Notes: generated by a model not told the origin, from the letters alone. Shown: positions 3 to 13,882, numbered from the stretch's first letter. The stretch is 64,000 nt of DNA from IMGVR_UViG_3300042558_004148:1-64000; one strand, 5' to 3'. A program made the numbers and translations.

Positions 3-848
3 TCAGGTACTGATGGAACTTCAGGTACCGATGGAACAAGCGGAACAAGTGGTACCGATGGAACTTCTGGAACAAGTGGTACTGATGGAACTTCTGGAAC
101 AAGTGGTACTGATGGAACTTCAGGTACTGATGGAACAAGCGGAACTTCAGGTACTGATGGAACTTCTGGAACAAGTGGTACTGACGGAACAAGCGGAACA
201 AGTGGTACCGATGGAACTTCTGGAACAAGTGGTACTGATGGAACAAGTGGTACTGATGGAACAAGTGGTACTGATGGAACAAGCGGAACAAGTGGTACCG
301 ATGGAACTTCTGGAACAAGTGGTACTGATGGAACAAGTGGTACCAATGGAACTTCTGGAACATCAGGTACTGATGGAACAAGCGGAACAAGTGGTACTGA
401 TGGAACTTCTGGAACAAGTGGTACTGATGGAACTTCTGGAACAAGTGGTACTGATGGAACTTCAGGTACCGATGGAACAAGTGGTACCGATGGAACTTCT
501 GGAACAAGTGGTACTAATGGAACTTCTGGAACAAGTGGTACTGATGGAACCTCAGGAACTGATGGAACATCTGGAACCTCAGGAACTGATGGAACCTCAG
601 GAACTGATGGAACAAGTGGTACTGATGGAACAAGTGGTACTGATGGAACAAGTGGTACTGATGGAACAAGTGGTACTGATGGAACAAGTGGTACTGATGG
701 AACAAGTGGTACCGATGGAACAAGTGGTACCGATGGAACAAGTGGTACTAACGGTACATCGGGAACTGATGGAACTAATGGAACATCAGGTACTAACGGA
801 TCTTCAGGTACTAACGGAACATCAGGAACAGCTGGAACTAGCGGCGTA
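3..848 (+). repeat. Collagen-like Gly-X-Y block 1 (GTS/GTD-dominated)
   Basis: Tandem GGAACTTCA/GGTACTGAT/GGAACAAGT 9-mers encoding GTS-GTD; GTN appears only from about 745. Confidence 0.95.
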
Positions 849-3800
849 GATGGAATATCATCAGGTCAAATATATTTTTTCAATGAAAGTATTAATTCGG
901 ACGTTTCAGGTTACAAAGAATTAAGTTTAAATCCAACATCTACGGGTCAAGTAACGGTAACTACAAATTTAACAGGTAGTCAAACTGGTGCTTTAGTTCA
1001 AGATTTTATGACACCTGAATTAGGATTTTCAATAATACCTGGTGGTGTACAAAGATTTAAGTTATATTATTTACTACCTGCGGTAAACGCTGATGTTGAA
1101 GGGTATGTTGAAATCCAATTGGCTGATTCATCGGGGTCTTTAATGGGACCTACAATAACTTCTAATGTTAGTGCATTGCCTTATGTTGACCCAACTAATC
1201 CGGGATTACTTGAGGTTGATATAGTATTACCTACAACATCAATATCCACAACTGATAGAATGGCGATAAGACTTTATCTTAATAATTTAGATTCGACAAG
1301 TCGTAGTGTTGTATTTTATACTGAAGGTAATGCTAACTATTCATATATAATAACATCAGTTGGTCAAATCGCTGGTACATCAGGAACTTCAGGTACTAAC
1401 GGATCATCGGGATCAAACGGAACTTCAGGTACTAACGGTACTGACGGAACATCGGGAACTAATGGAACTTCAGGTACTAACGGTACTAATGGAACATCAG
1501 GTACTAACGGAACTAATGGAACTTCAGGTACTAACGGAACTAGTGGAACGGATGGTACGTCAGGAACTAATGGTACGTCAGGTACAAACGGAACCAATGG
1601 AACATCAGGAACCAATGGAACATCAGGAACCAATGGAACATCAGGAACAAACGGAACCAATGGTACCTCAGGTACTGACGGAACTTCAGGGACTGATGGA
1701 GGTAATTTAACAGCATCTAATTACGTTGCTAAAGGAGTTAAAGGAGGTACCATTCAAACAATAACAAATGGAAGTGACCAAGTTGTAACATTTGTTGATG
1801 AGTTTGACCCTAATGGTTGGATAACATCCAATAAATTCCAACCAAACATTGAAGGGTATTATATTATTCAAGTTTCGGTATGGTGGTATCCTGCGTCAAC
1901 AGTATCAGGGCAAAATAATATCCAACTTAGAAAAAATGGTAGTACACAAGTTGCGATTCAACAATTTCCACTTGTTACTACTGAAGGGTACGGTCAAGAA
2001 ATTGATATTATAGTATATTTTAATGGTTCTACTGATTATATCGAGGTTACTGCTTACACCTCTAATCCAACATCGCAAGACATACACGGTGAGAGTTCAG
2101 GTACTTGGATTACCGGATCATTAGTTGTTGGTGGCGGAACTTCAGGTACTGATGGAACTTCAGGTACTAATGGAACCAACGGAACATCAGGAACCAATGG
2201 AACCAATGGAACCAATGGTACTTCAGGTACTGACGGAACTTCAGGAACCAATGGAACATCAGGTACTAACGGAACATCAGGTACTAATGGATCCTCAGGA
2301 ACCAATGGAACATCAGGTACTAACGGTACTAACGGAACCTCAGGTACTAATGGATCCTCAGGAACCAATGGAACATCGGGTACTAACGGTACTGACGGAA
2401 CATCAGGTACTAACGGAACCTCAGGTACTAATGGATCCTCAGGTACTAACGGTACTGACGGAACATCAGGAGCCAATGGAACTTCAGGTACTAACGGTAC
2501 TAACGGAACCTCAGGTACTAACGGAACATCAGGTACTAACGGAACATCAGGAACTAACGGAACATCGGGTACTAACGGTACCAATGGAACATCAGGTACT
2601 AATGGATCCTCAGGTACTAACGGAACATCAGGAACCAATGGAACATCAGGTACTAACGGTACTAATGGAACATCAGGTACTAATGGAACATCAGGAACCA
2701 ATGGAACATCAGGAACCAATGGTACTGACGGAACATCAGGAACCAATGGAACATCAGGTACTAATGGATCCTCAGGTACTAACGGTACTAATGGAACATC
2801 AGGTACTAATGGAACATCAGGAACTAATGGAACCAACGGAACATCAGGTACTAATGGATCCTCAGGAACCAATGGAACATCAGGTACTAACGGTACTAAT
2901 GGAACATCTGGTACTAATGGATCCTCAGGAACCAATGGAACATCAGGTACTAACGGTACTAATGGAACATCTGGTACTAATGGATCCTCAGGAACCAATG
3001 GATCCTCAGGAACCAATGGAACATCAGGTACTAATGGAACCAACGGAACATCGGGTACTAATGGATCCTCAGGAACTAATGGAACATCAGGTACTAATGG
3101 AACCAACGGAACATCGGGTACTAATGGATCCTCAGGAACTAATGGAACATCAGGTACTAACGGTACTAATGGAACATCAGGAACCAACGGAACTAATGGA
3201 ACTTCAGGTACTAATGGAACTTCAGGTACTAATGGAACTTCAGGAACCAATGGAACTTCAGGAACTAACGGAACCAATGGAACTTCAGGAACCAATGGAA
3301 CATCAGGTACTAATGGAACTTCAGGAACCAATGGAACCAATGGAACTTCAGGTACTAACGGAACTTCAGGAACTAATGGAACCTCAGGAACCAACGGAAC
3401 TAATGGAACTTCAGGAACCAACGGAACTAATGGAACTTCAGGAACCAATGGAACTTCAGGAACCAATGGAACTAATGGAACCTCGGGTACTAACGGAACT
3501 TCGGGAACCAATGGAACCAATGGAACTTCAGGTACTAACGGAACTTCGGGAACCAATGGAACCAATGGAACTTCAGGTACTAACGGAACTTCAGGAACTA
3601 ATGGAACCTCAGGAACCAACGGAACTAATGGAACTTCAGGAACCAACGGAACCAATGGAACTTCAGGTGCTAACGGAACTTCAGGTACTAACGGTACTAA
3701 TGGATCTTCAGGTACTAATGGAACATCGGGTGTAAGCGGATTAAACGGTACTAATGGAACATCAGGTACTAATGGTACTAACGGAACATCGGGTACTAAC

Positions 3801-5582
3801 GGAACATCGGGTACTAACGGAACATCGGGTACTAACGGAACTAATGGAACTTCAGGAACTAATGGGACATCAGGTACTAACGGTACTAATGGAACTTCAG
3901 GAACTAATGGGACATCAGGTACTAACGGTACTAATGGAACTTCAGGAACCAATGGGACATCAGGTACTAATGGAACTTCAGGTACTAATGGAACTTCAGG
4001 TACTAATGGAACTTCAGGTACTAATGGAACATCAGGTATCAATGGTGTAGATGGTGCATCTGGAACATCGGGAACTAATGGAACTAATGGAACTTCAGGT
4101 ACTAACGGTAGTCCAGGTAGTCCAGGTAGCCCAGGAACATCTGGTACTAACGGTACTAACGGAACCTCAGGTACTAATGGAACTTCAGGTACTAACGGTA
4201 GTCCAGGTAGTCCAGGTAGCCCAGGAACATCAGGTACTAATGGTACTTCAGGTACTAGTAGTGGTGGTGCAGCTGCAGTTATTGTATTAGGTGGCGGTAT
4301 TTGTTCATCAATTAGATGTGGTGCGAATAACCAGGCAACTGCAAATTACAGTGCAGCCCTAAGCGGTAGATGCAATTCTTCAGGAGCTGCTTTTTCAGTA
4401 ATCAGTGGAGGTTGCTATAATCGAACAACTAACCTATCCTGTAATTCAGTAATCGGTGGAGGCCTTGTTAACTATATTAGCTCCTGTTATTCAACAATTG
4501 GTGGTGGTTGTCTTAACAGAGTTTGTATTCCAAGAGCTACCATTTCGGGAGGGTTATGTAACCTTATAACTGGTGCTTGCTCAACTATTGGTGGTGGATT
4601 TGATAATTCCATAGCTAGTCGTAGGGCAACTATCGGTGGAGGTAATACCAATAGTGCTGCAGGTGATTCAGATCTTGCAACAATTGGTGGTGGATGTGGA
4701 AATGAGATAGGTAGTTGTGGTATAGCTGCTGTGATTTCAGGAGGATATCAAAATTCCGTGGACGCTGGTTATTCAGCAATCGGAGGGGGAGCTTCAAATC
4801 AGATTGGTTCTGCTAGCCATAAATTTATCGGAGGAGGAAAGGGCAACTTTGTAACTAAAAACACAGGATGCTCCTCAGTTGTTGGAGGACAGGATAATGC
4901 CATTGATGGTGATGCCATAAGATCATTTATTGGAGGTGGATATGGAAATATTATCACTGGTTATGCTTGTCTTAGTTCGATCGCTGGTGGAAGGCAGAAT
5001 GCAATATATCAGGGTGCTTGCCATTCTTTTATCGGGGGCGGAAGATATCATAAAATTCGAAGTGGTTCATGTTATAGCTCCATAGGAGGTGGTTTTAATA
5101 ATGATACAGCAGGTTGCTATAATGTGCATATGTTAGGAAGTAATCTTACTGCTAATCAAAATAACGCAACATTTGTCCAATATATTGTTAAAACTGGTGG
5201 TGGTACTTTTAGTATTGACCACCCAAACCCTAAATTAAGTGATGAATTGAGATTAAATCACTCTTTTGTTGAATCACCAACAGCAGGGGATAATATTTAT
5301 AGATTTAATATTGTAGTTGTTAACGGGGAAGCAATAATTGACTTACCAGATTATTTCAAATATCTAAATAAAGACGCTCAAGTTTGGATAACACCTAAAA
5401 ATGGATTTGGAATTGCTTATGGTGTTATAGACGACACGTATTCAAAGATAACAATTAAGGCAAATCTTGATATAGAATATGATGTACTTGTTATAGGTAC
5501 AAGGAAAGATAAGAATACTAAATTCTGGAAAGGCGCTGAAACACCACAACCCAAAAGAACTGAAACCCCGCAATCAGAATAA
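3..5582 (+). CDS. Giant collagen-like tail or virion fibre protein, 5'-truncated by the window edge (at least about 1,860 aa)
   Basis: Frame 3 is open from base 3 through the listed ATG at 1008 (...GTSGVDGISSGQIYFFNESINSDVSGYKELSLNPTSTG...VQDF-MTPELG), so 1008 is an internal Met. Order: three G-T-[S/D/N] triplet blocks separated by globular domains, a GG beta-roll repeat, then a C-terminal FSIDHP...HSFVESP...IDLPDYF domain of the kind seen at phage fibre ends. Confidence 0.85.
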   Translation, partial: SGTDGTSGTDGTSGTSGTDGTSGTSGTDGTSGTSGTDGTSGTDGTSGTSGTDGTSGTSGTDGTSGTSGTDGTSGTSGTDGTSGTDGTSGTDGTSGTSGTDGTSGTSGTDGTSGTNGTSGTSGTDGTSGTSGTDGTSGTSGTDGTSGTSGTDGTSGTDGTSGTDGTSGTSGTNGTSGTSGTDGTSGTDGTSGTSGTDGTSGTDGTSGTDGTSGTDGTSGTDGTSGTDGTSGTDGTSGTDGTSGTDGTSGTNGTSGTDGTNGTSGTNGSSGTNGTSGTAGTSGVDGISSGQIYFFNESINSDVSGYKELSLNPTSTGQVTVTTNLTGSQTGALVQDFMTPELGFSIIPGGVQRFKLYYLLPAVNADVEGYVEIQLADSSGSLMGPTITSNVSALPYVDPTNPGLLEVDIVLPTTSISTTDRMAIRLYLNNLDSTSRSVVFYTEGNANYSYIITSVGQIAGTSGTSGTNGSSGSNGTSGTNGTDGTSGTNGTSGTNGTNGTSGTNGTNGTSGTNGTSGTDGTSGTNGTSGTNGTNGTSGTNGTSGTNGTSGTNGTNGTSGTDGTSGTDGGNLTASNYVAKGVKGGTIQTITNGSDQVVTFVDEFDPNGWITSNKFQPNIEGYYIIQVSVWWYPASTVSGQNNIQLRKNGSTQVAIQQFPLVTTEGYGQEIDIIVYFNGSTDYIEVTAYTSNPTSQDIHGESSGTWITGSLVVGGGTSGTDGTSGTNGTNGTSGTNGTNGTNGTSGTDGTSGTNGTSGTNGTSGTNGSSGTNGTSGTNGTNGTSGTNGSSGTNGTSGTNGTDGTSGTNGTSGTNGSSGTNGTDGTSGANGTSGTNGTNGTSGTNGTSGTNGTSGTNGTSGTNGTNGTSGTNGSSGTNGTSGTNGTSGTNGTNGTSGTNGTSGTNGTSGTNGTDGTSGTNGTSGTNGSSGTNGTNGTSGTNGTSGTNGTNGTSGTNGSSGTNGTSGTNGTNGTSGTNGSSGTNGTSGTNGTNGTSGTNGSSGTNGSSGTNGTSGTNGTNGTSGTNGSSGTNGTSGTNGTNGTSGTNGSSGTNGTSGTNGTNGTSGTNGTNGTSGTNGTSGTNGTSGTNGTSGTNGTNGTSGTNGTSGTNGTSGTNGTNGTSGTNGTSGTNGTSGTNGTNGTSGTNGTNGTSGTNGTSGTNGTNGTSGTNGTSGTNGTNGTSGTNGTSGTNGTNGTSGTNGTSGTNGTSGTNGTNGTSGTNGTNGTSGANGTSGTNGTNGSSGTNGTSGVSGLNGTNGTSGTNGTNGTSGTNGTSGTNGTSGTNGTNGTSGTNGTSGTNGTNGTSGTNGTSGTNGTNGTSGTNGTSGTNGTSGTNGTSGTNGTSGTNGTSGINGVDGASGTSGTNGTNGTSGTNGSPGSPGSPGTSGTNGTNGTSGTNGTSGTNGSPGSPGSPGTSGTNGTSGTSSGGAAAVIVLGGGICSSIRCGANNQATANYSAALSGRCNSSGAAFSVISGGCYNRTTNLSCNSVIGGGLVNYISSCYSTIGGGCLNRVCIPRATISGGLCNLITGACSTIGGGFDNSIASRRATIGGGNTNSAAGDSDLATIGGGCGNEIGSCGIAAVISGGYQNSVDAGYSAIGGGASNQIGSASHKFIGGGKGNFVTKNTGCSSVVGGQDNAIDGDAIRSFIGGGYGNIITGYACLSSIAGGRQNAIYQGACHSFIGGGRYHKIRSGSCYSSIGGGFNNDTAGCYNVHMLGSNLTANQNNATFVQYIVKTGGGTFSIDHPNPKLSDELRLNHSFVESPTAGDNIYRFNIVVVNGEAIIDLPDYFKYLNKDAQVWITPKNGFGIAYGVIDDTYSKITIKANLDIEYDVLVIGTRKDKNTKFWKGAETPQPKRTETPQSE
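1374..1700 (+). repeat. Collagen-like Gly-X-Y block 2 (GTS/GTN)
   Basis: GTSGTSGTNGSSGSNGTSGTNGTD... in the fibre frame. Confidence 0.95.
1713..2127 (+). other. C1q/TNF-like (BclA C-terminal-like) trimerisation domain inside the fibre
   Basis: Beta-rich ~140 aa between collagen blocks with the pattern F-x-P-x3-GYY-x-I...IQLRKNG...IVYFNGSTDYIEV...TWITGSLV, typical of C1q-like jelly rolls. Confidence 0.65.
2136..4259 (+). repeat. Collagen-like Gly-X-Y block 3 (~700 aa, GTS/GTN, two GSP inserts)
   Basis: About 2.1 kb of near-uninterrupted Gly every third residue; GSPGSPGSPG occurs twice near 4110 and 4200. Confidence 0.95.
4350..5115 (+). repeat. Cys-rich ~15-17 aa GG beta-roll repeats (adhesin-head-like)
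   Basis: About 15 repeats of [SA]-[TVF]-I-[GS]-G-G-x2-N, e.g. SVISGGCYN, STIGGGCLN, ATISGGLCN, SFIGGGYGN. Confidence 0.8.
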
Positions 5583-5589
5583 ATAATTT

Positions 5590-5617
5590 GAAATTTTTTT
5601 CATCAATCGCAGTATAA
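5590..5617 (+). promoter_or_regulatory. Candidate middle (ECF-type) promoter GAAAT-N18-TATAA
   Basis: Same motif and spacing recur upstream of several non-structural genes (34335, 41476, 45611, 46543, 59518). Confidence 0.45.
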
Positions 5618-5634: not shown

Positions 5635-6456
5635 TTGATGAAAAAAATAATATTCAACTCATCATTACCTAGATCTGGATCAACACTTTGGCAAAATATA
5701 ATTGCACAAAATCCTGATTTCTATTGCACTCCCACTTCGGGACTTGCTGACATGGTGCTTTCCTCCAAGAACGCTTATAATAATTCGCAAGCTGTTTTAG
5801 CTCAGGATCCGGAGGTCATGAAGAAAGCTTTCATAGGATATTGTATGGCAGGAATTCAGGGATATTTTAATGACATAACGGACAAACCATTTGTACTCGA
5901 AAAAAGTAGGGAATGGGGAGTAAATTACGGACTTCTTAATATGCTCCAGCACGAACCCAAGGTTGTCTGTATGGTTAGGGATCTTAGATCCGTATATTCA
6001 TCAATGGAGAAGAATTTTAGAAAAAACCCACATCGCGAGAATCATGTGCAGAATGTTCCGGAATTGGTCGGTACAACTCTCAGAAAAAGAATAGATATTT
6101 GGGCTGATGGTGTACCTGTTGGTGTTTCTGTTGATAGATTGAGAGATATAATAGATCAGGGAATAGATAAAAATATACTTTTTATTAGATACGAGGACCT
6201 TATGAGCGATCCAGAATCAGAGGTTAAAAGATTCTACGACTATATAGGGATTGACTATTATCCAGGACATAATTTTAAAACAATCGAGCAGGTAACACAT
6301 GAAAATGATTTAATTCATGGAATATACGGTGATCATAAATTAAGAACCGAATTTAAAAGACTACCTGATGATTATGAGGAGATATTAGGATTTGAGCTTT
6401 CTCAGGCAATCAAGAATACCTATGGATGGTTCTATGATTATTTTGAATATGTGTAA
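5635..6456 (+). CDS. PAPS-dependent sulfotransferase
   Basis: N-terminal 5'-PSB loop SSLPRSGSTL; 3'-PB-like MVRDLRSVYSS; IRYEDL motif. Confidence 0.85.
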   Translation: MMKKIIFNSSLPRSGSTLWQNIIAQNPDFYCTPTSGLADMVLSSKNAYNNSQAVLAQDPEVMKKAFIGYCMAGIQGYFNDITDKPFVLEKSREWGVNYGLLNMLQHEPKVVCMVRDLRSVYSSMEKNFRKNPHRENHVQNVPELVGTTLRKRIDIWADGVPVGVSVDRLRDIIDQGIDKNILFIRYEDLMSDPESEVKRFYDYIGIDYYPGHNFKTIEQVTHENDLIHGIYGDHKLRTEFKRLPDDYEEILGFELSQAIKNTYGWFYDYFEYV

Positions 6457-6485: not shown

Positions 6486-6935
6486 ATGGCAATTTATATA
6501 CTAACCGGTCAACCTCATTCAGGAAAAACAACCCTCGCTAATCATTTAAAAAATTCTTTGGATAAATCTTTCGTTATAGATGGTGACGATCTGAGGGAAA
6601 TACTGAATAATAAGGATTATTCTGAAGCGGGAAGAAGAAAGAACATAGAGACAGCTCATTCGATAGCTAAATACTTATCTAGGCAGGACGTTAATAACAA
6701 TATAATAATATCATTGGTTAGCCCGTATAAAGATCTTAGAGACAGTCTAAAATGCGAAAATGGAGCTGTCGAATTTTATATACATACTTCTGAAATAAGG
6801 GGAAGAGAATCTTTTCATGTAGCAGAATATCAAAAACCTACTGAAGATTTTACTGATATTGACACTACTGGAATATCAGAAACTGAATCACTAAAACAAA
6901 TATTATGGAAAATTGGTCAAAAAAAGTCCATGTAA
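6486..6935 (+). CDS. cysC: Adenylyl-sulfate (APS) kinase, compact form
   Basis: P-loop LTGQPHSGKTT; IDGDDLR; RRKNI; SLVSPY; YQKP. Confidence 0.85.
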   Translation: MAIYILTGQPHSGKTTLANHLKNSLDKSFVIDGDDLREILNNKDYSEAGRRKNIETAHSIAKYLSRQDVNNNIIISLVSPYKDLRDSLKCENGAVEFYIHTSEIRGRESFHVAEYQKPTEDFTDIDTTGISETESLKQILWKIGQKKSM

Positions 6936-7309: not shown

Positions 7310-7563
7310 TGGAAACTAATCAGGAAATTCTAAAAAAGTCAGATAGAAAAGAAAATAGATCTAATATGATAAGACACATATTAAAAACACTTTCTTATAG
7401 AATATTAGGCACGATGACAACTGTAATTACTGCATATATGTTAGGAGCTTCGGTAGAATTAGCATCATTACTAGGTATGGGAGAGATTGTTTTCAAGCCT
7501 ATTATATATTTTTTGCATGAGAGAATTTGGTATAAATTCATCAGGATAGGATCAAAAAAATAA
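7309..7563 (+). CDS. DUF2061-like small membrane protein
   Basis: RHILKTLSYRILGT...IYFLHERIW pattern with two hydrophobic stretches; ATG overlaps the upstream stop. Confidence 0.75.
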   Translation: METNQEILKKSDRKENRSNMIRHILKTLSYRILGTMTTVITAYMLGASVELASLLGMGEIVFKPIIYFLHERIWYKFIRIGSKK

Positions 7564-7567: not shown

Positions 7568-8443
7568 ATGAATATAATATTGGAGGTTTCTGGTGGATTG
7601 GGTAAAAGCTTTATGTCCACCGCTGTAGTAAAAGCTTTACGTAAACAGTATACTAGAGATAACATAATAGTGGTAACATCATATCCCGATGTTTTTAAAG
7701 GTAATAATAATGTTAATAGAATTATTACCCACGCAAATGCGGGTCCAATTTATAGGGATTTTATTAACAACAAGGAAGCTAAAGTATTTATTACCGATCC
7801 ATACACAACCTCCGATTTTATAACGGAAAAAAAACATCTTATCGAGATATGGTGCGATTTGTGTGGTGTCCCTTATGATGGGGAACTGCCTGAATTATTT
7901 ATAAGTAAATCTGAAAGACAATATTATGAGCAGTTTTATAAATTAGATAAGCCTATAATGGCTATACATCCGAATGGTGGAAGCATAGAGCAACCTCTAA
8001 AATATAGCTGGACCCGAGATATTCCGCAACCAATAATTGAGAATATTATAGAGCACTATAAAGATGATTATTCCGTGGTACATATAAGAAGGGAAGATCA
8101 ATTTCAATATGATAACACAATTTCTGCATTGGATAATTTTAGAAGCATTGCAATTATGCTGACCCTTTCAGAAAAAAGACTTCTTATAGACTCATCTGCG
8201 ATGCATATAGCATCTTCCCTGGGTTTACCGTCAACAGTTGCCTGGATCGGAACAAATCCCAAAGTTTTTGGCTATAATATACATGATAATATAATTGCTA
8301 ATCCACATACGGAAAAGCACGATATATCGAATAATTACTATCAGAAATATATGTTATTTGAGGATATCAGTAGAATACCATATTCCGATATGAATGACAT
8401 TTTTAATATTAGCGATATTATAGATAGCATAAATAAACAATAA
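7568..8443 (+). CDS. GT9-like (ADP-heptose-type) glycosyltransferase
   Basis: SGGLGK...TAVVKALRK N-terminus; LLIDSSAMHIASSLGLPSTVAW C-terminal GT-B motif. Confidence 0.7.
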   Translation: MNIILEVSGGLGKSFMSTAVVKALRKQYTRDNIIVVTSYPDVFKGNNNVNRIITHANAGPIYRDFINNKEAKVFITDPYTTSDFITEKKHLIEIWCDLCGVPYDGELPELFISKSERQYYEQFYKLDKPIMAIHPNGGSIEQPLKYSWTRDIPQPIIENIIEHYKDDYSVVHIRREDQFQYDNTISALDNFRSIAIMLTLSEKRLLIDSSAMHIASSLGLPSTVAWIGTNPKVFGYNIHDNIIANPHTEKHDISNNYYQKYMLFEDISRIPYSDMNDIFNISDIIDSINKQ

Positions 8444-8454
8444 AAATAAAAAAT

Positions 8455-8730
8455 ATGGAAAATGAATTAAAATTACCTGAAGATCTAATTTTAGAAATTC
8501 AAAATCTGAAAGAGGTTTTGATGGATAATATAATTAAAGTGGGTAGATTAAGTGTACAGAAATCCTTTTACGAGAAGGACCTTTCCGCTATAAACAACGA
8601 ATTAGAATCCTTACATAACGAAGCTTCTGACATATATGCTAGGGAGGAAGCTTTGCAGGAGAAGGTAGTCGGTAAATACGGTAAAGGTAAACTCGATTTT
8701 GAGACTGGATTATTTACGAAGGATATGTAA
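8455..8730 (+). CDS. Small acidic coiled-coil hypothetical protein
   Basis: Clean ORF with A-rich leader inside the operon; heptad-like helix. Confidence 0.6.
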   Translation: MENELKLPEDLILEIQNLKEVLMDNIIKVGRLSVQKSFYEKDLSAINNELESLHNEASDIYAREEALQEKVVGKYGKGKLDFETGLFTKDM

Positions 8731-8736
8731 TTCCTT

Positions 8737-9669
8737 ATGAAGAAACTCTGTATAGATATAAGCGAGGCTAGAGCTATTGGCGATACATTATGTGTATCGC
8801 CAGTTTTGCGTAAACTATATTACTCATATGGTAGAAAAATATCTATAATAACTCATCATACAGATATATTTAGAAATAATCCATATGTTGATTCTCTATA
8901 TCTTCCTGGTGATCTTGATTTGGATGATGATTTCGAAATATTTAGAACTTTCGATGTAAACTATAAATCCGATGGCATATGCAATAAGCATAATACTATT
9001 GACATTAGGCAGTTCCATGCAATTAGCCTTGGATTCATGTTAAATCAGGAGGAACTTACTTTGGATTTTTTCCCTTCTGATTTTGAAGAAATACAGGGAC
9101 TTCCCGATAGATACGTTCTTATACATCCCGTACAAAACTGGGAATCCAGAACATGGGATAGAGAAAAATGGATTCTATTAGTCAGAGCTTTGAATGCGGG
9201 CGGAATAAGTGTGGTTTCTGTCGGAAAGGAGTCATCCGAAATGGGTGGATCCAATGTTCAAAAGCCAACCTTTAATTTTGATATTGAATTGGGTATGAAT
9301 TTACAGAACAAAACATCATTATCTCAGACGTGGTGGCTGATTGAAAAAAGTGAATGCTTCGTTACTATGGATTCTGGTCTTCTACATTTAGCAGGTACTA
9401 CCGATTCTGAAATAATTCAATTAGGCAGTTCAATAGATAATAAGTTTAGAGCACCATATAGAAAGGGATCTCAGGAATATAAATACCATTATGTTTCTGG
9501 TGGATGTAATTTGAAATGTGCGTCTGATATAAAATATGGTGTAAGAGAATGGAACACGATACAGGGAATACCTTCGTTGGTCGGATGTCTGGAGGGAAAG
9601 AAAACTTTCGAATGCCATCCAAGCGTAATGAGTGTTTATAATAAAATAATGTCCACTGTTAATAAATAA
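8737..9669 (+). CDS. GT9-family glycosyltransferase with C-terminal Cys cluster
   Basis: AIGDTLCVSPVLRKL; FVTMDSGLLHLAG; C-x3-C...C-x8-C near the C-terminus. Confidence 0.8.
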   Translation: MKKLCIDISEARAIGDTLCVSPVLRKLYYSYGRKISIITHHTDIFRNNPYVDSLYLPGDLDLDDDFEIFRTFDVNYKSDGICNKHNTIDIRQFHAISLGFMLNQEELTLDFFPSDFEEIQGLPDRYVLIHPVQNWESRTWDREKWILLVRALNAGGISVVSVGKESSEMGGSNVQKPTFNFDIELGMNLQNKTSLSQTWWLIEKSECFVTMDSGLLHLAGTTDSEIIQLGSSIDNKFRAPYRKGSQEYKYHYVSGGCNLKCASDIKYGVREWNTIQGIPSLVGCLEGKKTFECHPSVMSVYNKIMSTVNK

Positions 9670-9677
9670 GTATCCGG

Positions 9678-10607
9678 ATGGGTAATAAAATAATATTGAT
9701 TAGTTCATATTGCGATAATGAGGAAAAGATTAGTGTATTAGAATCTAATATAAGAACACTAAAAAATCTCGGTCTGGATGTTATGCTTAATAGTCCTATT
9801 GATATACCAAATAGGGTCTCCTCATTATGCGATTATTATATAAGAACTAAAGATAATCCGATTATCGACTGGCCAATTAAATCGGTATCGGTTTGGTCTG
9901 AATATCGATGTAAAGGGAAGAAAATAATTATGAATAGATGTCTACCTGATTACGGATGGGCAAATATCCATCAGGTAAAAAAATTATCAGAATATGCATT
10001 AACGTATGATTATGAATATTTCTACCATATAATATATGATATAAAAATTGACGATACCGTTTTGAGTGGTATACTATCCGATGCGGAATGTAATTTCTAT
10101 CATTTCCATGAGCATTGGGTAAGTCTACATTTTATGCTATTTGATAGGAAAAACTTAGTATCATTTATATCTGGATTAAATATAAATGAATATATTGAAT
10201 TTTGTGGAATTGCTGAAACCTGGCTAAAAAACTACCTGGAGAATTCAGATTTGCCGTATAAAGTGGATGATTGTTATGTTGATGACCATATACTTTTTCA
10301 TAATGGAGTAGATCTTTTTAATTATTCGGGATTTTCTGAATTTAGGTATTTCATAGCTAAAAATGCTATGGAAAATAATTCTATTAAAATTTATTTCTAT
10401 GGTGTTAAAAATCATATTGATTTAAAAATCCACCTTAATTCAACCACAAAAATATACGAAATAGCTGATAGAGATATAATAGATCTTGAATTATCTCGCG
10501 ATGACATGATATCTGTCATAATTGAATATAACGGATTAACCGAAGATATAACTGAAAAAATAAGATCCATAACACACAATAATATTAATTTATATGAAGA
10601 GAATTAA
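9678..10607 (+). CDS. Hypothetical protein in the glycosylation cluster
   Basis: 309-aa ORF overlapping the next gene; no confident family. Confidence 0.6.
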   Translation: MGNKIILISSYCDNEEKISVLESNIRTLKNLGLDVMLNSPIDIPNRVSSLCDYYIRTKDNPIIDWPIKSVSVWSEYRCKGKKIIMNRCLPDYGWANIHQVKKLSEYALTYDYEYFYHIIYDIKIDDTVLSGILSDAECNFYHFHEHWVSLHFMLFDRKNLVSFISGLNINEYIEFCGIAETWLKNYLENSDLPYKVDDCYVDDHILFHNGVDLFNYSGFSEFRYFIAKNAMENNSIKIYFYGVKNHIDLKIHLNSTTKIYEIADRDIIDLELSRDDMISVIIEYNGLTEDITEKIRSITHNNINLYEEN

Positions 10608-13473
10608 ACTATTATATTTAACCCCACATCTATCAACCGGTGGAATGCCTCAGTTCGCACTGAAGAGAATACAGAAACTTAATGAATATAGTGATGAGAT
10701 AGAAATCTTTGTTGTCGAGTACTCCAAATTTAGTGATACCTATGTTGTCCAAAGAAATTCAATACTTGAAATGATTGACAGTGATCATTTCTTTACACTG
10801 GGGGATACATCCGATACTAGAAGAAAATATGAGATAATTCAGATAATTAAGGATAATGATATAGATTTAGTTCATTCAGAGGAAATATTAGAGGGATTTG
10901 AAAGTTTTAATAAGATCCCTGCTGATTTAATTAACATGTTATATTCCGATGATAGAAGCTGGAGAATGATTGAAACCTGTCATAATATTTGGTTTGATCC
11001 GAAAGAATTTAAAAAATTAAAACCTGATGCATATTCATTAATTTCACCACATCATACGGAAAAAACATTCGCATCTGAGTCCTCATATAAGGAGCTTCAT
11101 CTATATCCATATGAGAATAAAACAGATATAAGAATAAAAAATAGGAAGAATTCTATCAAAAAACTGGGATTTGATAGAAATAAGAAAAACGTTCTCAATG
11201 TTGGATTATGGACTAGTGGAAAGAATCAGGGAGAGGGAATAGAAATTGCTAGATTCATAGAATCATCTAGTCCTGATGTATTTTTTCATTTTGTAGGTAA
11301 TTTAGCTCCAAATTTCGAAAATTACTGGGGAGATATAACAAAGAATCTACCAAGCAATGTTAAGATATGGGGGGAGCGTGACGATGTTGATGAATTCATG
11401 ATAGCATGTGACGCCATGATGTTTAATTCTACCTGGGAATGCAATCCTTTAGTTATAAGAGAAGCCATAGGATATGGCATGAAGATATTAGCCAGAAATC
11501 TACCGCAATATTATAACATGTATGATGGATACATCACTCCGATAGAGGGTGATATAAAAGAAATATCGGGACGACTTATTGATATGCTTGAATCTGATAT
11601 TGAATATCAGGTACCTGATGATTCTAATTTTGGTAGGACATTATTGGATTTCTATAGGAAGGTAATGGAGATAGAAATAACACCACAGCCTAAAATAGAA
11701 AATGACTACGAGTTTATACAACATTTTGTTGGTCAGCCCTATTTCGAATTAAGAGGCAGTAGTAGTAATAAATTTAAGGTGGAATTCTCTGATGGTGGAA
11801 AAATTATACATTCGGATCTCCTAAATTTTAATAGCTGGTCGAAATTAAACAGAAAATATTATACCAAATGGGACACAACGGTATATGAAAATGGTGAAAT
11901 AATATATAAGAATTCATTAGATCTTAGGGACAGAAGAGTTTATATTGCATTTGGATCTAAATCTCTAGGTGATACTCTTGCGTGGATACCTTACATGGAG
12001 GAATTTAGAAAAATTCATAATTGCGAATTGATAGTTTCTACGTTCATTAATCACTTATTCATTGAACAGTATCCCAATATTACTTTTGTCAATCCAGGGG
12101 AAACTGTAAATAATTTATATGCCCAATATAATATTGGATGGTATTATGACAGTAACGGAAATATTGATTATAATAAGGTTCCAAACGACTTTAGAAAACA
12201 ACCTTTACAGAAGACAGCCACTGATATACTCGGTCTCGAATATAAGGAAATAAAGCCTCGTTTAAATTTACCTAACGTGAAAAAAAAGAAAAAAGTTGGG
12301 ATAGGATTTCATTCAACTGCTCAGGCCAAATACTGGAACAATCCTAACGGATGGCAAGAGGTAATTGATCATCTTAATTCGATTGGTTATGAATGCATGA
12401 TATATTCCAGAGAGGGAGACGGATATATGAATAATGCATATCCAAAAAATGTTGATGTGTTTAAAGGCGGAAATCTACAGGATGTAATAAATGATCTGTG
12501 TGAGTGTGAATTTTTCATTGGCTTGGGCTCTGGATTAAGTTGGCTAGCTTGGTCATGTAAATTACCAATCATTTTGATTTCTGGATTTAGTGAAAGATTT
12601 TCTGAAACTTCATCCGACACATATAGAATTATTAACGAGGATGTTTGCCACGGATGCTTTAATTCGGAAATGCTAGATGCTGGAGATTGGAATTGGTGTC
12701 CATTACATAAAAATTCGGAGAGAATGTTTGAGTGTACAAAACAAATTAATTCTAATATGGTTACCAAGGAAATAGATAGATTAATTGGGGAAAATCACAT
12801 ACCAAATTTTGATTGGGGTTGGATGAACGATGGTAGTTCTAATGGTAATTATCACAAGAAACTTATGTATAATGAGATATTTGAGCAAAAAATATATGAG
12901 AGATTCTTTGAAGTTGATCATTCCGATATTGTATTGGATGTTGGTTCTAGCGTCGGCCCATTCACATATTCGATATTAAAGAAAAATCCTAAACATGTAT
13001 TTTGTATAGAACCTAGTGAGAGTGAATTTACTACACTAGTTAAAAATACATTAGGTAATCCGGTTACTCATATAAATAAGGGATTATCAGATATAAATGG
13101 AGTTATCGAATATGATCAATTATTTGGAGGAGAAACACATATGGAATCCATTACCTTTGATAAGCTCGTTAAATTATACGGTCTGAATAGGATAGATTTC
13201 ATGAAAACTGATTGTGAGGGCGGTGAATATGAGATTTTTAAGAAAGATAATCTTGACTTTATTAAAAAAAATATAAAGAAGATTGCCGGCGAATGGCATT
13301 TAATGAGTAAAGAAAATAAAGAAAAATTCAGGGATTTCCGGGATAATATATTAATAGAGTTCGATCGATATGAGGTATTATCATTAGATGGTATTGATAT
13401 AAAATGGGATCTATGGAACGAACATTTTATAGAGTATTATAATGAGGTCCTTATATACATAGATAATAGATAG
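10594..13473 (+). CDS. Three-domain enzyme: GT4 glycosyltransferase + Aah/TibC-type (BAHT) protein O-heptosyltransferase + FkbM-family methyltransferase
   Basis: GT4: PHLSTGGMPQ, GERDDV, ECNPLVIREA. BAHT: RVYIAFGSKSLGDTLAWIPY and the iron-finger VCHGCFN...WNWCPLHK...FECTKQI. FkbM: VLDVGSSVGPF, IDFMKTDCEGGEY. Confidence 0.8.
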   Translation: MKRIKLLYLTPHLSTGGMPQFALKRIQKLNEYSDEIEIFVVEYSKFSDTYVVQRNSILEMIDSDHFFTLGDTSDTRRKYEIIQIIKDNDIDLVHSEEILEGFESFNKIPADLINMLYSDDRSWRMIETCHNIWFDPKEFKKLKPDAYSLISPHHTEKTFASESSYKELHLYPYENKTDIRIKNRKNSIKKLGFDRNKKNVLNVGLWTSGKNQGEGIEIARFIESSSPDVFFHFVGNLAPNFENYWGDITKNLPSNVKIWGERDDVDEFMIACDAMMFNSTWECNPLVIREAIGYGMKILARNLPQYYNMYDGYITPIEGDIKEISGRLIDMLESDIEYQVPDDSNFGRTLLDFYRKVMEIEITPQPKIENDYEFIQHFVGQPYFELRGSSSNKFKVEFSDGGKIIHSDLLNFNSWSKLNRKYYTKWDTTVYENGEIIYKNSLDLRDRRVYIAFGSKSLGDTLAWIPYMEEFRKIHNCELIVSTFINHLFIEQYPNITFVNPGETVNNLYAQYNIGWYYDSNGNIDYNKVPNDFRKQPLQKTATDILGLEYKEIKPRLNLPNVKKKKKVGIGFHSTAQAKYWNNPNGWQEVIDHLNSIGYECMIYSREGDGYMNNAYPKNVDVFKGGNLQDVINDLCECEFFIGLGSGLSWLAWSCKLPIILISGFSERFSETSSDTYRIINEDVCHGCFNSEMLDAGDWNWCPLHKNSERMFECTKQINSNMVTKEIDRLIGENHIPNFDWGWMNDGSSNGNYHKKLMYNEIFEQKIYERFFEVDHSDIVLDVGSSVGPFTYSILKKNPKHVFCIEPSESEFTTLVKNTLGNPVTHINKGLSDINGVIEYDQLFGGETHMESITFDKLVKLYGLNRIDFMKTDCEGGEYEIFKKDNLDFIKKNIKKIAGEWHLMSKENKEKFRDFRDNILIEFDRYEVLSLDGIDIKWDLWNEHFIEYYNEVLIYIDNR

Positions 13474-13510
13474 TATTAAAAATATGATAAATAGAAAAAC
13501 TTTTTAATTT

Positions 13511-13882
13511 ATGCGAATAGACGTTTCTGTGGGAGAAATTGTTGATAAGTTATCAATATTAGAAATTAAGAAAAATAATATATCGGATAGGGATAAACTT
13601 GTTAATATAAACAGTGAGTTTGAATACCTCTATTCGATTGTATTTAACGATCTTTTGATTGATTACGAAGATTTTTCCGGACTTGTTTTAATCAACGAGG
13701 AATTATGGAAGATAGAGGATAGGATAAGAATAAAGGAAAGAAGAAAAATATTTGACTCGGAATTTATATCTTTGGCTAGATCAGTTTATATAACTAATGA
13801 CAAAAGGTCAGAAATTAAAAAGTATATAAATTTAAAATATGGTTCTATTTTTACCGAGGAAAAATCATACGAAAAATACTAA
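13511..13882 (+). CDS. DUF6165-like protein
   Basis: VSVGEIVDKLSILEIK...NEELWKIEDRIR...ARSVYITNDKR pattern, typically found in glycosyltransferase clusters. Confidence 0.7.
   Translation: MRIDVSVGEIVDKLSILEIKKNNISDRDKLVNINSEFEYLYSIVFNDLLIDYEDFSGLVLINEELWKIEDRIRIKERRKIFDSEFISLARSVYITNDKRSEIKKYINLKYGSIFTEEKSYEKY

What the first reader, a model, noticed from the sequence alone, without database searches (positions are those of the whole stretch)
3..13882. Candidate phage-encoded virion glyco-armour system: giant Ser/Thr collagen fibre next to heptosylation, sulfation and methylation enzymes
Seen: a fibre with over 1,000 residues of G-T-S/N/D repeats is followed, in one co-oriented block ending at a single terminator (13896), by a sulfotransferase, APS kinase, HxGH nucleotidyltransferase, two GT9-like transferases, a GT4+BAHT+FkbM fusion and DUF6165. 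A heptose-7-P kinase is at 39127. Established: BAHT enzymes (Aah/TibC) O-heptosylate Ser in adhesin repeats using ADP-heptose; Bacillus BclA is a collagen + C1q-like surface glycoprotein; sulfotransferases need PAPS. Inference: the phage supplies its own donors and decorates its own fibre or virion with sulfated and methylated heptose glycans, possibly for receptor binding, shielding or stability. An alternative is remodelling of host LPS for superinfection exclusion.
Basis: partly seen in the sequence, partly recalled or inferred. Interest (0 to 1): 0.92.

Follow-up and report, generated by a model that had tools for sequence, protein, structure and literature searches.

The report
Phage fibre with its own glycosylation genes
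A huge uncultured phage encodes a giant serine/threonine-rich collagen-like tail fibre right next to a phage-specific version of the bacterial enzyme that puts heptose sugars on adhesins, plus extension, methylation and sulfation genes; the same pairing recurs in many phages, one of them cultured, so self-glycosylation of the fibre is likely and can now be tested.

Summary
The frame is open from window base 3 to 5582: at least 1,859 aa with 1,104 residues of G-T-S/N/D triplets, a UspA1-like beta-roll head and a C-terminal knob. A tight operon follows: sulfotransferase, APS-kinase-like, HxGH nucleotidyltransferase, DUF2061, a remote GT9-like protein, GT9, an unassigned 309-aa protein, a GT4+BAHT+FkbM fusion, DUF6165 and a strong hairpin.

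The BAHT call is solid: TIGR04414 273 bits (cut-off 200), TibC E 1.5e-66, catalytic Asp and the four iron-finger Cys conserved. It belongs to a clean viral clade that has lost the adenine-contacting Arg-286.

In 17 of 28 viral BAHT lineages a Ser/Thr collagen ORF lies in the flank, and in 14 it lies within 3 kb. Bacterial BAHTs sit beside large ORFs, AIDA-type adhesins where tested. Cultured Microcystis phage Mel-JY01 has the same pairing.

The nucleotidyltransferase belongs to a mobile four-gene sulfation cassette, not to heptose activation.

Best reading (confidence 0.6, inferred from comparative genomics): the phage O-glycosylates its own fibre. The donor nucleotide, the sulfation target and any "armour" role are open. 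This is a new variant of known virion glycosylation. Interest 0.74.

The parts
3..5582 (+). Giant collagen-like fibre gene, N-terminus beyond the window and contig start; at least 1,859 aa
   Evidence: Open frame without stops. Pfam Collagen E 2e-114. The complete homologue in L088 (2,673 aa) has the same domain order, and its N-terminal part hits PHROG 'tail fiber protein' at E 6.7e-20.
6..860 (+). Collagen run 1: 95 G-T-S/D triplets
861..1373 (+). Globular insert A, conserved in the L088 fibre
   Evidence: no Pfam or PHROG match
1374..1706 (+). Collagen run 2: 37 triplets
1707..2135 (+). Globular insert B: all-beta, jelly-roll-like (C1q/TNF/CBM-like); assignment inconclusive
   Evidence: AlphaFold pLDDT 58.6. 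Foldseek gives weak matches with TM below 0.5 to a phage spike knob, C1QL, CBM35 and TNF ligands.
2136..4259 (+). Collagen run 3: 236 uninterrupted G-T-N/S triplets
4260..5159 (+). Beta-roll 'GGG head' repeats (S/T-I-G-G-G-x-x-N) like the head of the trimeric autotransporter adhesin UspA1
   Evidence: phmmer to PDB 3pr7, E 5e-17
5160..5579 (+). C-terminal globular domain (candidate tip or knob)
   Evidence: Conserved in the fibres of L087-L089 and L165; no family match.
5635..6456 (+). PAPS-type sulfotransferase
   Evidence: Pfam Sulfotransfer_3 and Sulfotransfer_1 above cut-off. 'LPRSGSTL' and the R...S motif are invariant.
6486..6935 (+). APS-kinase-like P-loop kinase, short (149 aa)
   Evidence: Pfam APS_kinase 48 bits. 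Matches solved APS kinases at E 1.5e-7 with aligned motifs.
6905..7309 (+). HxGH/ISxT nucleotidyltransferase overlapping the kinase gene; a member of the sulfation cassette; substrate unknown
   Evidence: cassette conservation
7309..7563 (+). DUF2061 small hydrophobic protein, fourth gene of the cassette
   Evidence: Pfam 58 bits; sequence; contexts
7568..8443 (+). Remote GT9-like GT-B glycosyltransferase ('u291'); travels with the sulfotransferase
   Evidence: hhalign against the GT9 family: 95%, E 3.5e-8. Neighbours in L051, L088-L091, L291 and L293.
8455..8730 (+). 91-aa ORF rich in charged and heptad-like residues, unknown
   Evidence: no family match
8737..9669 (+). GT9 glycosyltransferase with four conserved C-terminal Cys resembling the BAHT iron finger
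   Evidence: Pfam 51 bits; family alignment; sequence
9678..10607 (+). 309-aa protein of unknown function
   Evidence: No family, PDB or PHROG match. The fold model failed at pLDDT 46. One homologue beside a fusion gene in L022 and a partial one beside a collagen ORF in L119.
10594..11763 (+). Fusion protein, GT4 (GT-B) domain
   Evidence: Pfam Glycos_transf_1 at residues 184-336
11797..12780 (+). Fusion protein, BAHT (TibC/Aah-type) domain. Asp-460, Thr-575, Lys-579, Trp-650 and Cys-685/688/702/714 are conserved; Val-631 replaces TibC Arg-286; Gly-645 replaces Pro-300.
12931..13344 (+). Fusion protein, FkbM-family methyltransferase domain
   Evidence: TIGR01444 46.5 bits against a cut-off of 37.7; Pfam Methyltransf_21
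13511..13882 (+). DUF6165 protein; directly follows the BAHT or FkbM gene in three other lineages
13895..13929 (+). Intrinsic-terminator-like hairpin closing the block
39127..40095 (+). [quoted passage not shown]
   Evidence: TIGR02198 E 6e-90, 301 bits, below the 345 cut-off. Adjacent to BAHT in L028, L031, L052-L069, L071 and L211.

Best explanation
The block is a virion-fibre glycosylation system of a roughly 370-kb T4-like huge phage.

PROPOSED MECHANISM (inferred; no chemistry shown).
1. Late in infection the giant trimeric fibre is made in the cytoplasm. It consists of proline-poor G-T-S/N collagen stalks, jelly-roll-like inserts, a beta-roll head and a knob.
2. The TibC-like BAHT domain of the 959-aa fusion protein transfers a heptose from an NDP-heptose onto exposed Ser (possibly Thr) hydroxyls of the fibre. 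This mirrors how bacterial BAHTs hyper-heptosylate the repeat adhesin encoded next to them.
3. The fused GT4 domain and the GT9 protein extend the sugar. The fused FkbM domain O-methylates it.
4. The phage HldE-like kinase boosts the heptose-phosphate supply. The host supplies the rest.
5. A separate, mobile four-gene cassette (sulfotransferase, APS kinase, nucleotidyltransferase, DUF2061) makes PAPS locally. Together with the GT9-like protein at 7568-8443 it adds a sulfated sugar, possibly on the beta-roll head.

SHOWN: the gene content, family memberships, conserved catalytic residues and the conserved linkage.

INFERRED: the acceptor, the sugar, the order of steps and the benefit. The benefit could be helix stabilisation in a collagen that lacks hydroxyproline, protease resistance, or receptor or glycan interactions.
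For: BAHT MEMBERSHIP.
- TIGR04414 273 bits against a cut-off of 200; TibC 4RAP E 1.5e-66.
- The catalytic Asp, the beta-phosphate Thr and Lys, the heptose-O4 Trp and all four iron-finger Cys are invariant in 53 of 53 viral domains.

FIBRE LINKAGE.
- 223 viral stretches encode relatives.
- Of 28 lineages (80% identity clusters), 17 carry a Ser/Thr collagen ORF of at least 30 triplets in the flank. In 14 it lies within 3 kb, in 11 within 1.5 kb. Binomial against even placement: 1e-5 and 4e-6.
- Orientation is convergent, tandem-upstream or tandem-downstream in different lineages.
- All such neighbours are G-[S/T]-[S/N/D].
- The group without collagen (L052-L069) has a 1,900-3,000-aa fibre-like ORF directly upstream.
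- The converse search from the fibre C-terminus recovers L088/L089 with the whole enzyme set in inverted order.
- It is the only collagen gene in the 64 kb.

BACTERIAL CONTRAST.
- Bacterial BAHTs are stand-alone and are often followed directly by an ORF of 900 aa or more. Of four such ORFs tested, two carry AIDA repeats, one has cadherin-like and one passenger-associated repeats.
- The viral clade is clean, with support 0.985.

ONE PATHWAY. GT4, BAHT, FkbM and GT9 are fused in different combinations across lineages.

HEPTOSE. The HldE-like kinase is adjacent to BAHT in several lineages.

STRUCTURAL CONTEXT. The order fibre, cluster, neck, TerL, sheath, tube and portal follows the T4 late order.

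CULTURED EXAMPLE. Microcystis phage Mel-JY01 has a G-T-S collagen ORF, a Ser-rich structural protein and a GT4+methyltransferase+BAHT fusion.

PRECEDENTS. Mycobacteriophage virion glycans (cited in PMC12619734); PBCV-1 A064R and Mimivirus L71/L230 (PMC9614988).
Against: - There is no biochemical or proteomic evidence. The acceptor is inferred from gene neighbourhood only.
- Only 6 of 120 randomly sampled viral loci with Ser/Thr collagen had a BAHT in their (short) flanks. Such fibres usually do without a nearby BAHT.
- 11 of 28 BAHT lineages show no long collagen within 10 kb.
- TibC acts on a folded beta-helix inside a dodecameric ring (PMC4358343). A collagen triple helix is a very different acceptor, and the fusion to two other domains may preclude the ring.
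- Arg-286, whose Ala mutant abolished or largely diminished TibC activity, is missing from the viral clade.
- GT9 enzymes classically act on LPS cores. DUF2061 looks membrane-embedded.
- Lineages were treated as independent in the statistics, although synteny is partly inherited.
Confidence: 0.6

Rival explanations
1. The enzymes act on the virion, but the collagen is not the acceptor. The targets would be the beta-roll head of the same fibre, which resembles autotransporter adhesin heads and contains I-S-G-G turns like the N-S-G-G heptosylation site of TibA, or other structural proteins such as the sheath, capsid or a Ser-rich partner protein.
For: - The head matches UspA1 at E 5e-17.
- The TibA sites lie in N-S-G-G and T-S-A-A turns of a beta-helix (PMC4358343).
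- Sulfotransferase plus the GT9-like u291 sit next to beta-roll-head fibres without collagen in L090 and L091. In L291 and L293 they follow beta-roll-head fibres whose upstream parts lie outside the locus.
- Mel-JY01 has a Ser-rich 'structural protein' between the collagen gene and the fusion gene.
- Mycobacteriophages glycosylate the capsid and tail tube.
Against: BAHT itself tracks collagen-bearing fibres with quite different C-termini: L008, L015, L025 and L035 lack the GGG head. BAHT is absent from the flanks of the head-only fibres in L090 and L091.
Confidence: 0.15
2. The cluster remodels the host envelope during infection. It would add heptose, methyl and sulfate to the LPS core, capsule, S-layer or host adhesins, for superinfection exclusion or to stop progeny from re-adsorbing to lysed cells. 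The fibre is only a neighbour.
For: - GT9 is the LPS heptosyltransferase family, and 8737-9669 scores best against LPS heptosyltransferase models.
- A huge-phage heptosyltransferase has been read as an LPS gene before (PMC10747093).
- DUF2061 is hydrophobic.
- The sulfation cassette also occurs away from fibres, next to lysis and queuosine genes.
Against: - The BAHT family is protein-specific, and its residues are conserved.
- Linkage to fibre genes persists through rearrangements.
- The block sits inside the late structural gene order and runs without a gap of more than 76 nt from the fibre stop to the terminator.
- No Wzx/Wzy, WaaL or lipid-carrier enzyme was found in the block.
Confidence: 0.12
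3. The enzymes build a free or lipid-linked sulfated, methylated oligosaccharide or small glycoconjugate unrelated to virion proteins.
For: - Sulfotransferase plus APS kinase modules are known from Nod-factor sulfation (own knowledge). There is a weak NoeE hit.
- Several proteins remain unassigned: 9678-10607, 8455-8730 and DUF6165.
Against: The BAHT domain and the repeated fibre adjacency argue against it. No polyketide, lipid or export genes are present in the block.
Confidence: 0.06
4. The adjacency is incidental. Both the fibre genes and the glycosyltransferases merely accumulate in the same hypervariable accessory region of large phage genomes.
For: Most lack a nearby BAHT.
Against: - 14 of 17 collagen neighbours lie within 3 kb (p about 1e-5).
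- The window has a single collagen gene in 64 kb.
- The pairing recurs in phages whose terminases are only 26% identical.
Confidence: 0.05

Closest known systems
TibC/TibA and Aah/AIDA-I: bacterial autotransporter heptosyltransferases (BAHT) of E. coli and their adhesin substrates
   Same: - The enzyme family is the same by curated HMM and by 228 bits to the TibC structure.
- The catalytic Asp, phosphate- and sugar-binding residues and the Cys4 iron finger are the same.
- The enzyme gene lies next to a giant, repetitive, Ser-rich surface protein.
   Different: - The enzyme is fused between a GT4 and an FkbM domain rather than stand-alone.
- It forms a separate viral clade.
- Arg-286 is replaced by Val, Leu, Thr or Ile, and position 300 is Gly or Ser.
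- The neighbouring protein is a collagen-like phage fibre without an autotransporter barrel.
- Further transferases imply an oligosaccharide rather than single heptoses.
Bacillus exosporium BclA-type collagen-like glycoproteins (own knowledge)
   Same: A collagen-like G-X-Thr/Ser stalk carries a globular C-terminal domain on a surface filament. The O-glycosylation genes are encoded nearby.
   Different: The repeat chemistry differs (G-T-S/N here, G-P-T there), as do the sugars (rhamnose and anthrose there) and the enzymes. The fibre here is far longer and is viral.
Mycobacteriophage virion glycosylation (Freeman et al. 2023, as cited in PMC12619734)
   Same: Phage-encoded glycosyltransferases modify the phage's own structural proteins in the cytoplasm.
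   Different: Those targets are the C-termini of capsid and tail-tube subunits, the enzymes are of other families, and no heptose, methyl or sulfate modules are involved. Here modification is inferred, not shown.
Giant-virus glycosylation: PBCV-1 A064R (GT-GT-methyltransferase fusion), Mimivirus collagen-like L71 with L230, and Megavirinae fibril gene clusters that include sulfate metabolism (PMC9614988)
   Same: A virus-encoded multidomain GT+GT+methyltransferase protein acts on a virion protein. Viral collagen-like proteins are glycosylated by a viral enzyme. Glycogene clusters sit beside fibril genes.
   Different: Those are eukaryotic viruses with unrelated enzyme families and either N-linked or hydroxylysine-linked sugars.
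PAPS-dependent glycan sulfation modules such as rhizobial NodPQ and NodH (own knowledge)
   Same: An APS kinase is encoded together with a carbohydrate-type sulfotransferase, so that PAPS is made where it is used.
   Different: There is no CysD/CysN-type ATP sulfurylase. Instead a 134-aa HxGH nucleotidyltransferase and DUF2061 are always present. The acceptor is unknown.

Membership tests
BAHT (TibC/Aah, TIGR04414) | Curated family HMM above its trusted cut-off over the full domain | tested here: met
   273.2 bits against 200, profile positions 39-373 of 374; TibC PDB 4RAP E 1.5e-66
BAHT (TibC/Aah, TIGR04414) | Catalytic base Asp-110 and the donor contacts Thr-226, Lys-230 and Trp-305 | tested here: met
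   Asp-460, Thr-575, Lys-579 and Trp-650 of the fusion; invariant in 53 viral domains
BAHT (TibC/Aah, TIGR04414) | Four-Cys iron-finger motif (Cys-339, 342, 358, 370) | tested here: met
   Cys-685, 688, 702 and 714; invariant in viral and bacterial sets
BAHT (TibC/Aah, TIGR04414) | Arg-286 contacting adenine N1 (ADP specificity) | tested here: not met
   Val-631 here. The position is V, L, T, I or A in 52 of 53 viral domains but Arg in 44 of 48 bacterial ones.
BAHT (TibC/Aah, TIGR04414) | N-terminal beta-barrel, beta-hairpin thumb and dodecameric ring | not testable with these tools
   The alignment starts at TibC residue 62, so the barrel is only partly covered. The oligomeric state of a three-domain fusion is unknown.
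BAHT (TibC/Aah, TIGR04414) | Transfers heptose to Ser of a repeat protein encoded next door | not testable with these tools
   Only the gene adjacency to a Ser-rich repeat protein is shown.
Collagen triple-helix repeat proteins (PF01391) | Long uninterrupted G-X-Y runs | tested here: met
   368 triplets in three runs; Pfam E 2e-114. Trimer formation was not tested.
Trimeric autotransporter adhesins | Head repeats together with a C-terminal membrane-anchor barrel | tested here: not met
   The head repeats match UspA1, but no anchor domain was found. This is a resemblance of one module only.
APS kinase (CysC) | Family HMM and the P-loop, DGDxxR and SPY motifs | tested here: inconclusive
   Pfam 48.4 bits against 21.1, and the motif stretches align. 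However, it scores 48 bits against the 138.7 cut-off for TIGR00455, and at 149 aa it lacks part of the C-terminal third.
PAPS-dependent sulfotransferases | Family HMM and the 5'-PSB and 3'-PB motifs | tested here: met
   Pfam 60.5 and 50.3 bits, above cut-offs. 'PRSGST' and the R...S motif are invariant in four homologues.
HldE kinase domain (TIGR02198) | Equivalog HMM above cut-off | tested here: not met
   301.5 bits against 345, though E 6e-90 and full length. It is linked to BAHT genes in other phages.
Heptose-1-P nucleotidyltransferase (HldE domain II / HldC) | Family match and linkage to heptose genes | tested here: not met
   The best matches are NadM-type NMNAT models. The gene always travels with the APS kinase and sulfotransferase, even without BAHT or PfkB.
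GT9 glycosyltransferases | Pfam PF01075 above cut-off | tested here: met
   8737-9669 scores 51.2 bits against 22. 7568-8443 is only a remote relative (hhalign 95%). 9678-10607 has no match.
FkbM methyltransferases | TIGR01444 / PF05050 above cut-off | tested here: met
   46.5 bits against 37.7, and 34.8 against 22.7

The most novel reading that the evidence does not exclude
A phage-specific BAHT clade, found on at least 223 viral stretches and in a cultured cyanophage, hyper-glycosylates proline-poor G-S/T-S/N collagen triple helices. The glycan would then do the stabilising job of hydroxyproline and turn the fibre into a mucin- or proteoglycan-like, methylated and sulfated filament. The clade-wide loss of the adenine-contacting Arg would mean it uses a non-ADP NDP-heptose. 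That would give the recently found viral heptose enzymes and CDP-/UDP-heptoses their first physiological role. The 134-aa HxGH protein of the four-gene cassette would be a minimal sulfate adenylyltransferase, making the phage self-sufficient for PAPS.
Probability: 0.2. Interest if true: 0.88.

Novelty: new variant of a known kind. Interest (0 to 1): 0.74.

Why it matters
Virus-encoded glycosylation of virion proteins is established for a few mycobacteriophages and for giant viruses of eukaryotes. It is essentially unexplored in the huge phages of natural waters.

If this reading is right:
- A whole clade of adhesin-type heptosyltransferases has been recruited by phages to decorate giant collagen-like fibres.
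- Ser/Thr-only collagens, which are very common in viral metagenomes, may be glyco-stabilised.
- Viral heptose-pathway genes, whose purpose a 2024 commentary calls unsolved (PMC11573728), get a concrete function.
- The work also defines a compact, mobile phage sulfation cassette.
- Because Microcystis phage Mel-JY01 carries the collagen-plus-BAHT pairing, the idea can be tested directly on purified virions.

Practical consequences include fibre stability, receptor recognition and antigenicity. Annotation pipelines are also affected: they currently call these genes 'LPS heptosyltransferase' or 'methyltransferase FkbM', and they mis-call collagen genes on the wrong strand.

Tried and rejected
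- NUCLEOTIDE SEARCH. Megablast of the cluster and of the structural genes against GenBank phages gave no match. Only protein-level relatives exist.
- N-GLYCOSYLATION. The post-ATG part of the fibre carries 154 N-X-S/T sequons. However, Asn at the Y position is not conserved in BAHT-linked fibres: several have 16 or fewer sequons. No N-glycosyltransferase-like protein was seen. Rejected as the general mechanism.
- NUCLEOTIDYLTRANSFERASE AS THE ADP-HEPTOSE ENZYME. Rejected on family matches and on linkage.
- GmhA AND GmhB. Not found in the 47 window ORFs scanned with Pfam. ORFs 25021-26595, 44138-44560, 48224-50815, 50884-52854, 52871-54574, 56957-59449 and 62368-62715 were not scanned, and the other roughly 310 kb of the genome was not available.
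- T4 LATE PROMOTER. TATAAATA is not enriched: 12 matches against 16.4 expected. The sigma-70 scan was at background.
- ORF 9678-10607. It had no family, PDB or PHROG match, and its AlphaFold model had pLDDT 46, so no fold search was run.
- PROFILE OF 7568-8443 AGAINST PDB SEQUENCES. Nothing found. The link to GT9 came only from profile-profile comparison.
- MISSING N-TERMINUS OF THE WINDOW'S FIBRE. A search using the L088 N-terminus did not hit this contig. All contigs of this phage end inside the collagen repeat. The upstream genes of relatives gave no informative PHROG hits.
- 'LED repeat' HIT OF ORF 13-849. Spurious alternative frame.
- LITERATURE. Searches for phage BAHT or collagen glycosylation found nothing, and none for Mel-JY01.

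Full report
WHAT THE WINDOW IS. The window is the first 64 kb of IMG/VR contig IMGVR_UViG_3300042558_004148 (373,485 bp). Near-identical contigs of 218-373 kb exist. Almost every ORF is on the + strand. After the block under study come a T4 gp14-like neck protein, a T4-type large terminase, a 1,117-aa sheath, two tube paralogues and two portal paralogues. The terminase is 38% identical to uncultured huge phages and about 31% to Sphingomonas phage PAU and the Lak phages. There is no nucleotide-level relative in GenBank phages. This is a huge T4-like myophage of unknown host.

THE FIBRE.
The frame is open from base 3 to 5582 (1,859 codons) and is cut by the contig start. The listed ORF 13-849 is an alternative frame of the first collagen run.
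- There are 368 G-X-Y triplets (1,104 residues) in three runs, almost all GTN, GTS, GTD or GSS.
- Between the runs lie two globular inserts. The second is all-beta and gives only weak jelly-roll matches (C1q-like, TNF, CBM35, phage spike knob), so 'C1q-like' is plausible but unproven.
- After the last run comes about 300 aa of S/T-I-G-G-G-x-x-N repeats that match the head of the trimeric autotransporter adhesin UspA1 (E 5e-17), then a 140-aa terminal domain.
- The complete homologue in L088 (2,673 aa) has the same order of parts. Its N-terminal part hits PHROG 'tail fiber protein' at E 6.7e-20.
- By position the gene sits where T4 has gp12 and wac, just before the neck genes. This is positional inference from own knowledge of the T4 map.

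THE ENZYMES. From the fibre stop to a strong hairpin at 13895-13929 (-20.9 kcal/mol, z -5.75), eleven ORFs follow with gaps of 76 nt or less, or with overlaps.
- Sulfotransferase, with invariant PAPS-binding motifs.
- A short APS-kinase-like protein.
- An overlapping HxGH/ISxT nucleotidyltransferase closest to NadM-type enzymes.
- DUF2061, small and hydrophobic.
- A remote GT9-like protein at 7568-8443 (hhalign 95%).
- A 91-aa ORF.
- A GT9 protein with four conserved C-terminal cysteines.
- An unassigned 309-aa protein.
- The 959-aa GT4+BAHT+FkbM fusion.
- DUF6165.
An HldE-domain-I-like kinase lies 25 kb away. No GmhA or GmhB was found among the ORFs scanned.

IS THE BAHT CALL REAL? Yes. The domain passes the curated TIGR04414 cut-off (273 against 200 bits). 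It aligns to TibC residues 62-386 at E 1.5e-66.
- The TibC paper (PMC4358343) names these key residues: Asp-110 as the catalytic base; Thr-226 and Lys-230 on the beta-phosphate; Trp-305 on heptose O4; Arg-286 on adenine N1; and Cys-339, 342, 358 and 370 as the iron finger.
- In the fusion these are Asp-460, Thr-575, Lys-579, Trp-650, Val-631 and Cys-685/688/702/714.
- Across 53 distinct viral domains everything is invariant except position 286, which is Arg only once. Position 300 is the D,D- versus L,D-heptose selector: it is Pro in TibC and Ser in Aah, and Gly or Ser in the viral domains.
- In 48 bacterial relatives (Bradyrhizobium, Acetobacteraceae, Burkholderia and others) position 286 is Arg in 44.
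- The viral type, plus three MAG contigs with the same state, forms one clade with support 0.985.
- This is therefore a genuine BAHT of a distinct viral subfamily, and its nucleotide specificity may differ from ADP.

IS THE ENZYME TIED TO THE FIBRE?
- A scan of viral contigs with the fusion protein found 223 relatives.
- Clustering the BAHT domains at 80% identity gave 28 lineages. Seventeen have a collagen ORF of at least 30 triplets with Ser/Thr at X in the available flank. In 14 it lies within 3 kb, in 11 within 1.5 kb. Simple binomial tests against even placement give 1e-5 and 4e-6. Lineages are not fully independent.
- In the three with larger gaps, further homologues of the window's enzyme genes lie in between.
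- Orientation varies: convergent, tandem-upstream and tandem-downstream.
- Every such neighbour is G-[S/T]-[S/N/D]. Ser is universal and Asn is variable. This argues for O- rather than N-linked modification.
- Some are enormous, up to 907 triplets and more than 3,000 aa.
- The L052-L069 group lacks long collagen but has a 1,900-3,000-aa fibre-like ORF directly before GT4-BAHT-PfkB.
- In L012 the neighbours are Thr/Pro mucin-like repeat proteins.
- Searching from the fibre's C-terminus recovered L088/L089. These have a 2,673-2,845-aa collagen fibre followed by the inverted set u291-DUF2061-NTase-APSK-sulfoT-FkbM-GT4+BAHT+GT9.
- Many bacterial BAHT genes are followed directly by an ORF of 900 aa or more. 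Of four tested, two carry AIDA repeats, one cadherin-like and one passenger-associated repeats. Long collagen is never present. 'Enzyme next to its giant repeat substrate' is thus the family's habit.
- GT4, BAHT, FkbM and GT9 occur fused in at least six different combinations. That marks them as steps of one pathway.
- The caveat runs in the opposite direction. Ser/Thr collagens are very common in viral contigs: the scan hit its limit at 120 loci. Only 6 of those 120 loci, many with short flanks, contained a BAHT.

A CULTURED EXAMPLE. tblastn against GenBank phages found four records.
- Microcystis phage Mel-JY01 (190 kb) has a + strand ORF at 635-3052 with about 200 G-T-S/G-S-S triplets. GenBank annotates minus-strand hypothetical proteins there.
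- Next come a Ser-rich 'structural protein' and then a 1,227-aa GT4+methyltransferase+BAHT fusion with 47% identity in the BAHT domain. The terminase lies 7 kb downstream.
- Its terminase is only 26% identical to the window's. The module is therefore shared by distant phages.
- The 735-kb phage LR756501 also has a small G-S-S collagen ORF, a GT4 and a BAHT together.

THE SULFATION GENES ARE A SEPARATE MOBILE CASSETTE.
- Sulfotransferase, APS kinase, nucleotidyltransferase and DUF2061 recur in other phage contigs: in the same order with overlapping genes in L288-L290, and with one to three genes inserted after the sulfotransferase in L291 and L293. In L288-L290 they sit next to lysis and queuosine genes, with no BAHT, u291 or collagen hit within 5 kb.
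- In L291 and L293 the cassette follows fibres with YadA-like 'NIAIG' head repeats and is accompanied by u291. In L291 a GT4+BAHT+FkbM fusion and a GT9 are present as well.
- In the smaller phages L090 and L091 a GGG-head fibre without collagen is followed by just sulfotransferase and u291.
- Two inferences follow. First, the nucleotidyltransferase belongs to sulfate activation or use, possibly as a minimal sulfate adenylyltransferase, since ATP sulfurylases share this fold (own knowledge). It does not belong to heptose activation. Second, sulfotransferase plus u291 may serve the beta-roll head, while BAHT, GT4, FkbM and GT9 serve the collagen. The second point rests on few lineages.

COMPARISON WITH KNOWN SYSTEMS. 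It works like TibC/TibA and Aah/AIDA-I, where a cytoplasmic heptosyltransferase acts on a neighbouring repeat protein. It is a family member by every sequence criterion except the adenine-contacting Arg. It also differs in architecture (a three-domain fusion), in its partner protein and in clade. Conceptual precedents for viruses glycosylating their own structures are:
- mycobacteriophage capsid and tail-tube glycans (cited in PMC12619734);
- the PBCV-1 GT-GT-methyltransferase protein A064R;
- Mimivirus collagen-like L71 with L230;
- Megavirinae fibril clusters that include sulfate metabolism (PMC9614988).
Literature searches found no report of BAHT enzymes or collagen glycosylation in phages. 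A huge-phage heptosyltransferase was previously read as an LPS gene. A 2024 commentary states that the role of heptose-pathway enzymes in viruses is unsolved (PMC11573728).

VERDICT. Its details (own donors, ADP-heptose, the role of the nucleotidyltransferase, 'armour') are untested or weakened. I put 0.6 on fibre self-glycosylation with the collagen as the main acceptor, and 0.15 on another virion acceptor. The remainder covers host-envelope remodelling, a free glycoconjugate and chance adjacency. This is a new variant of a known kind of system. It is widespread and now testable in a cultured phage.

Noticed in passing
window 13-849 (+); L281 (Mel-JY01 PP395634.1) 1-651 and 739-2298 (-): Long ORFs in alternative frames or on the opposite strand of collagen repeats look like genes. 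The window's 278-aa ORF even gave a weak 'LED repeat' Pfam hit. In the GenBank record of Mel-JY01 the collagen gene (635-3052, + strand) appears to be replaced by minus-strand hypothetical proteins.
   Followed up: yes
window 1; contig ends of L001-L005, L082-L084, L269-L280: Every contig of this phage and of several relatives ends inside the collagen repeat. These fibres break assemblies, so the true length and N-terminus of the window's fibre are unknown.
   Followed up: partly
window 60133-61542 (+): The phage encodes a glutamine-dependent asparagine synthase (Asn_synthase E 1e-36). The fibre is 11% Asn, with 206 Asn in the visible part, so this could serve fibre synthesis.
   Followed up: no
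window 35879-37477 and 37482-39098 (+); 22523-23077 and 23094-23669 (+): There are tandem paralogues of the T4-type portal protein (both Portal_T4, E 6e-57 and 6e-69) and of the tail tube protein.
   Followed up: no
L288-L290 3314-5204; L291 and L293: A compact cassette with overlapping genes (sulfotransferase, APS kinase, 131-142-aa HxGH nucleotidyltransferase, DUF2061) is conserved across unrelated phage contigs. In L288-L290 it sits next to amidase/holin and QueC/QueD/QueE genes. Its acceptor there is unknown, and the nucleotidyltransferase might be a minimal sulfate adenylyltransferase.
   Followed up: partly
window 8737-9669 (+), residues about 257-293: The stand-alone GT9 family has four invariant cysteines (C-x3-C ... 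C ... F-E-C-H-P) at its C-terminus. They resemble the BAHT iron finger, although the protein scores better against LPS heptosyltransferase models.
   Followed up: partly
L012 5101-6876 and 12980-14998 (-): In one BAHT lineage the flanking genes encode proteins with hundreds of residues of T-P-T-N-T-L mucin-like repeats joined to Cys-rich domains. These are another plausible O-glycosylation substrate type.
   Followed up: no
window 27242-27874, 34388-34747, 34754-35239, 26668-27237, 45652-46551 (+): The phage encodes an ECF-type sigma factor and a second sigma region-2 fragment, a TnsA-like endonuclease, a dCMP deaminase and a UvdE-like UV endonuclease. No tRNA genes were found in the 64 kb.
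   Followed up: no
L214-L216 (MAG contigs assigned to Muiribacterium, Polaromonas and a betaproteobacterium): These 'bacterial' MAG contigs carry viral-type BAHT (Leu or Ile at position 286). Two have a small G-T-S collagen ORF next to it. They are probably phage contigs binned into MAGs, or host hints.
   Followed up: partly
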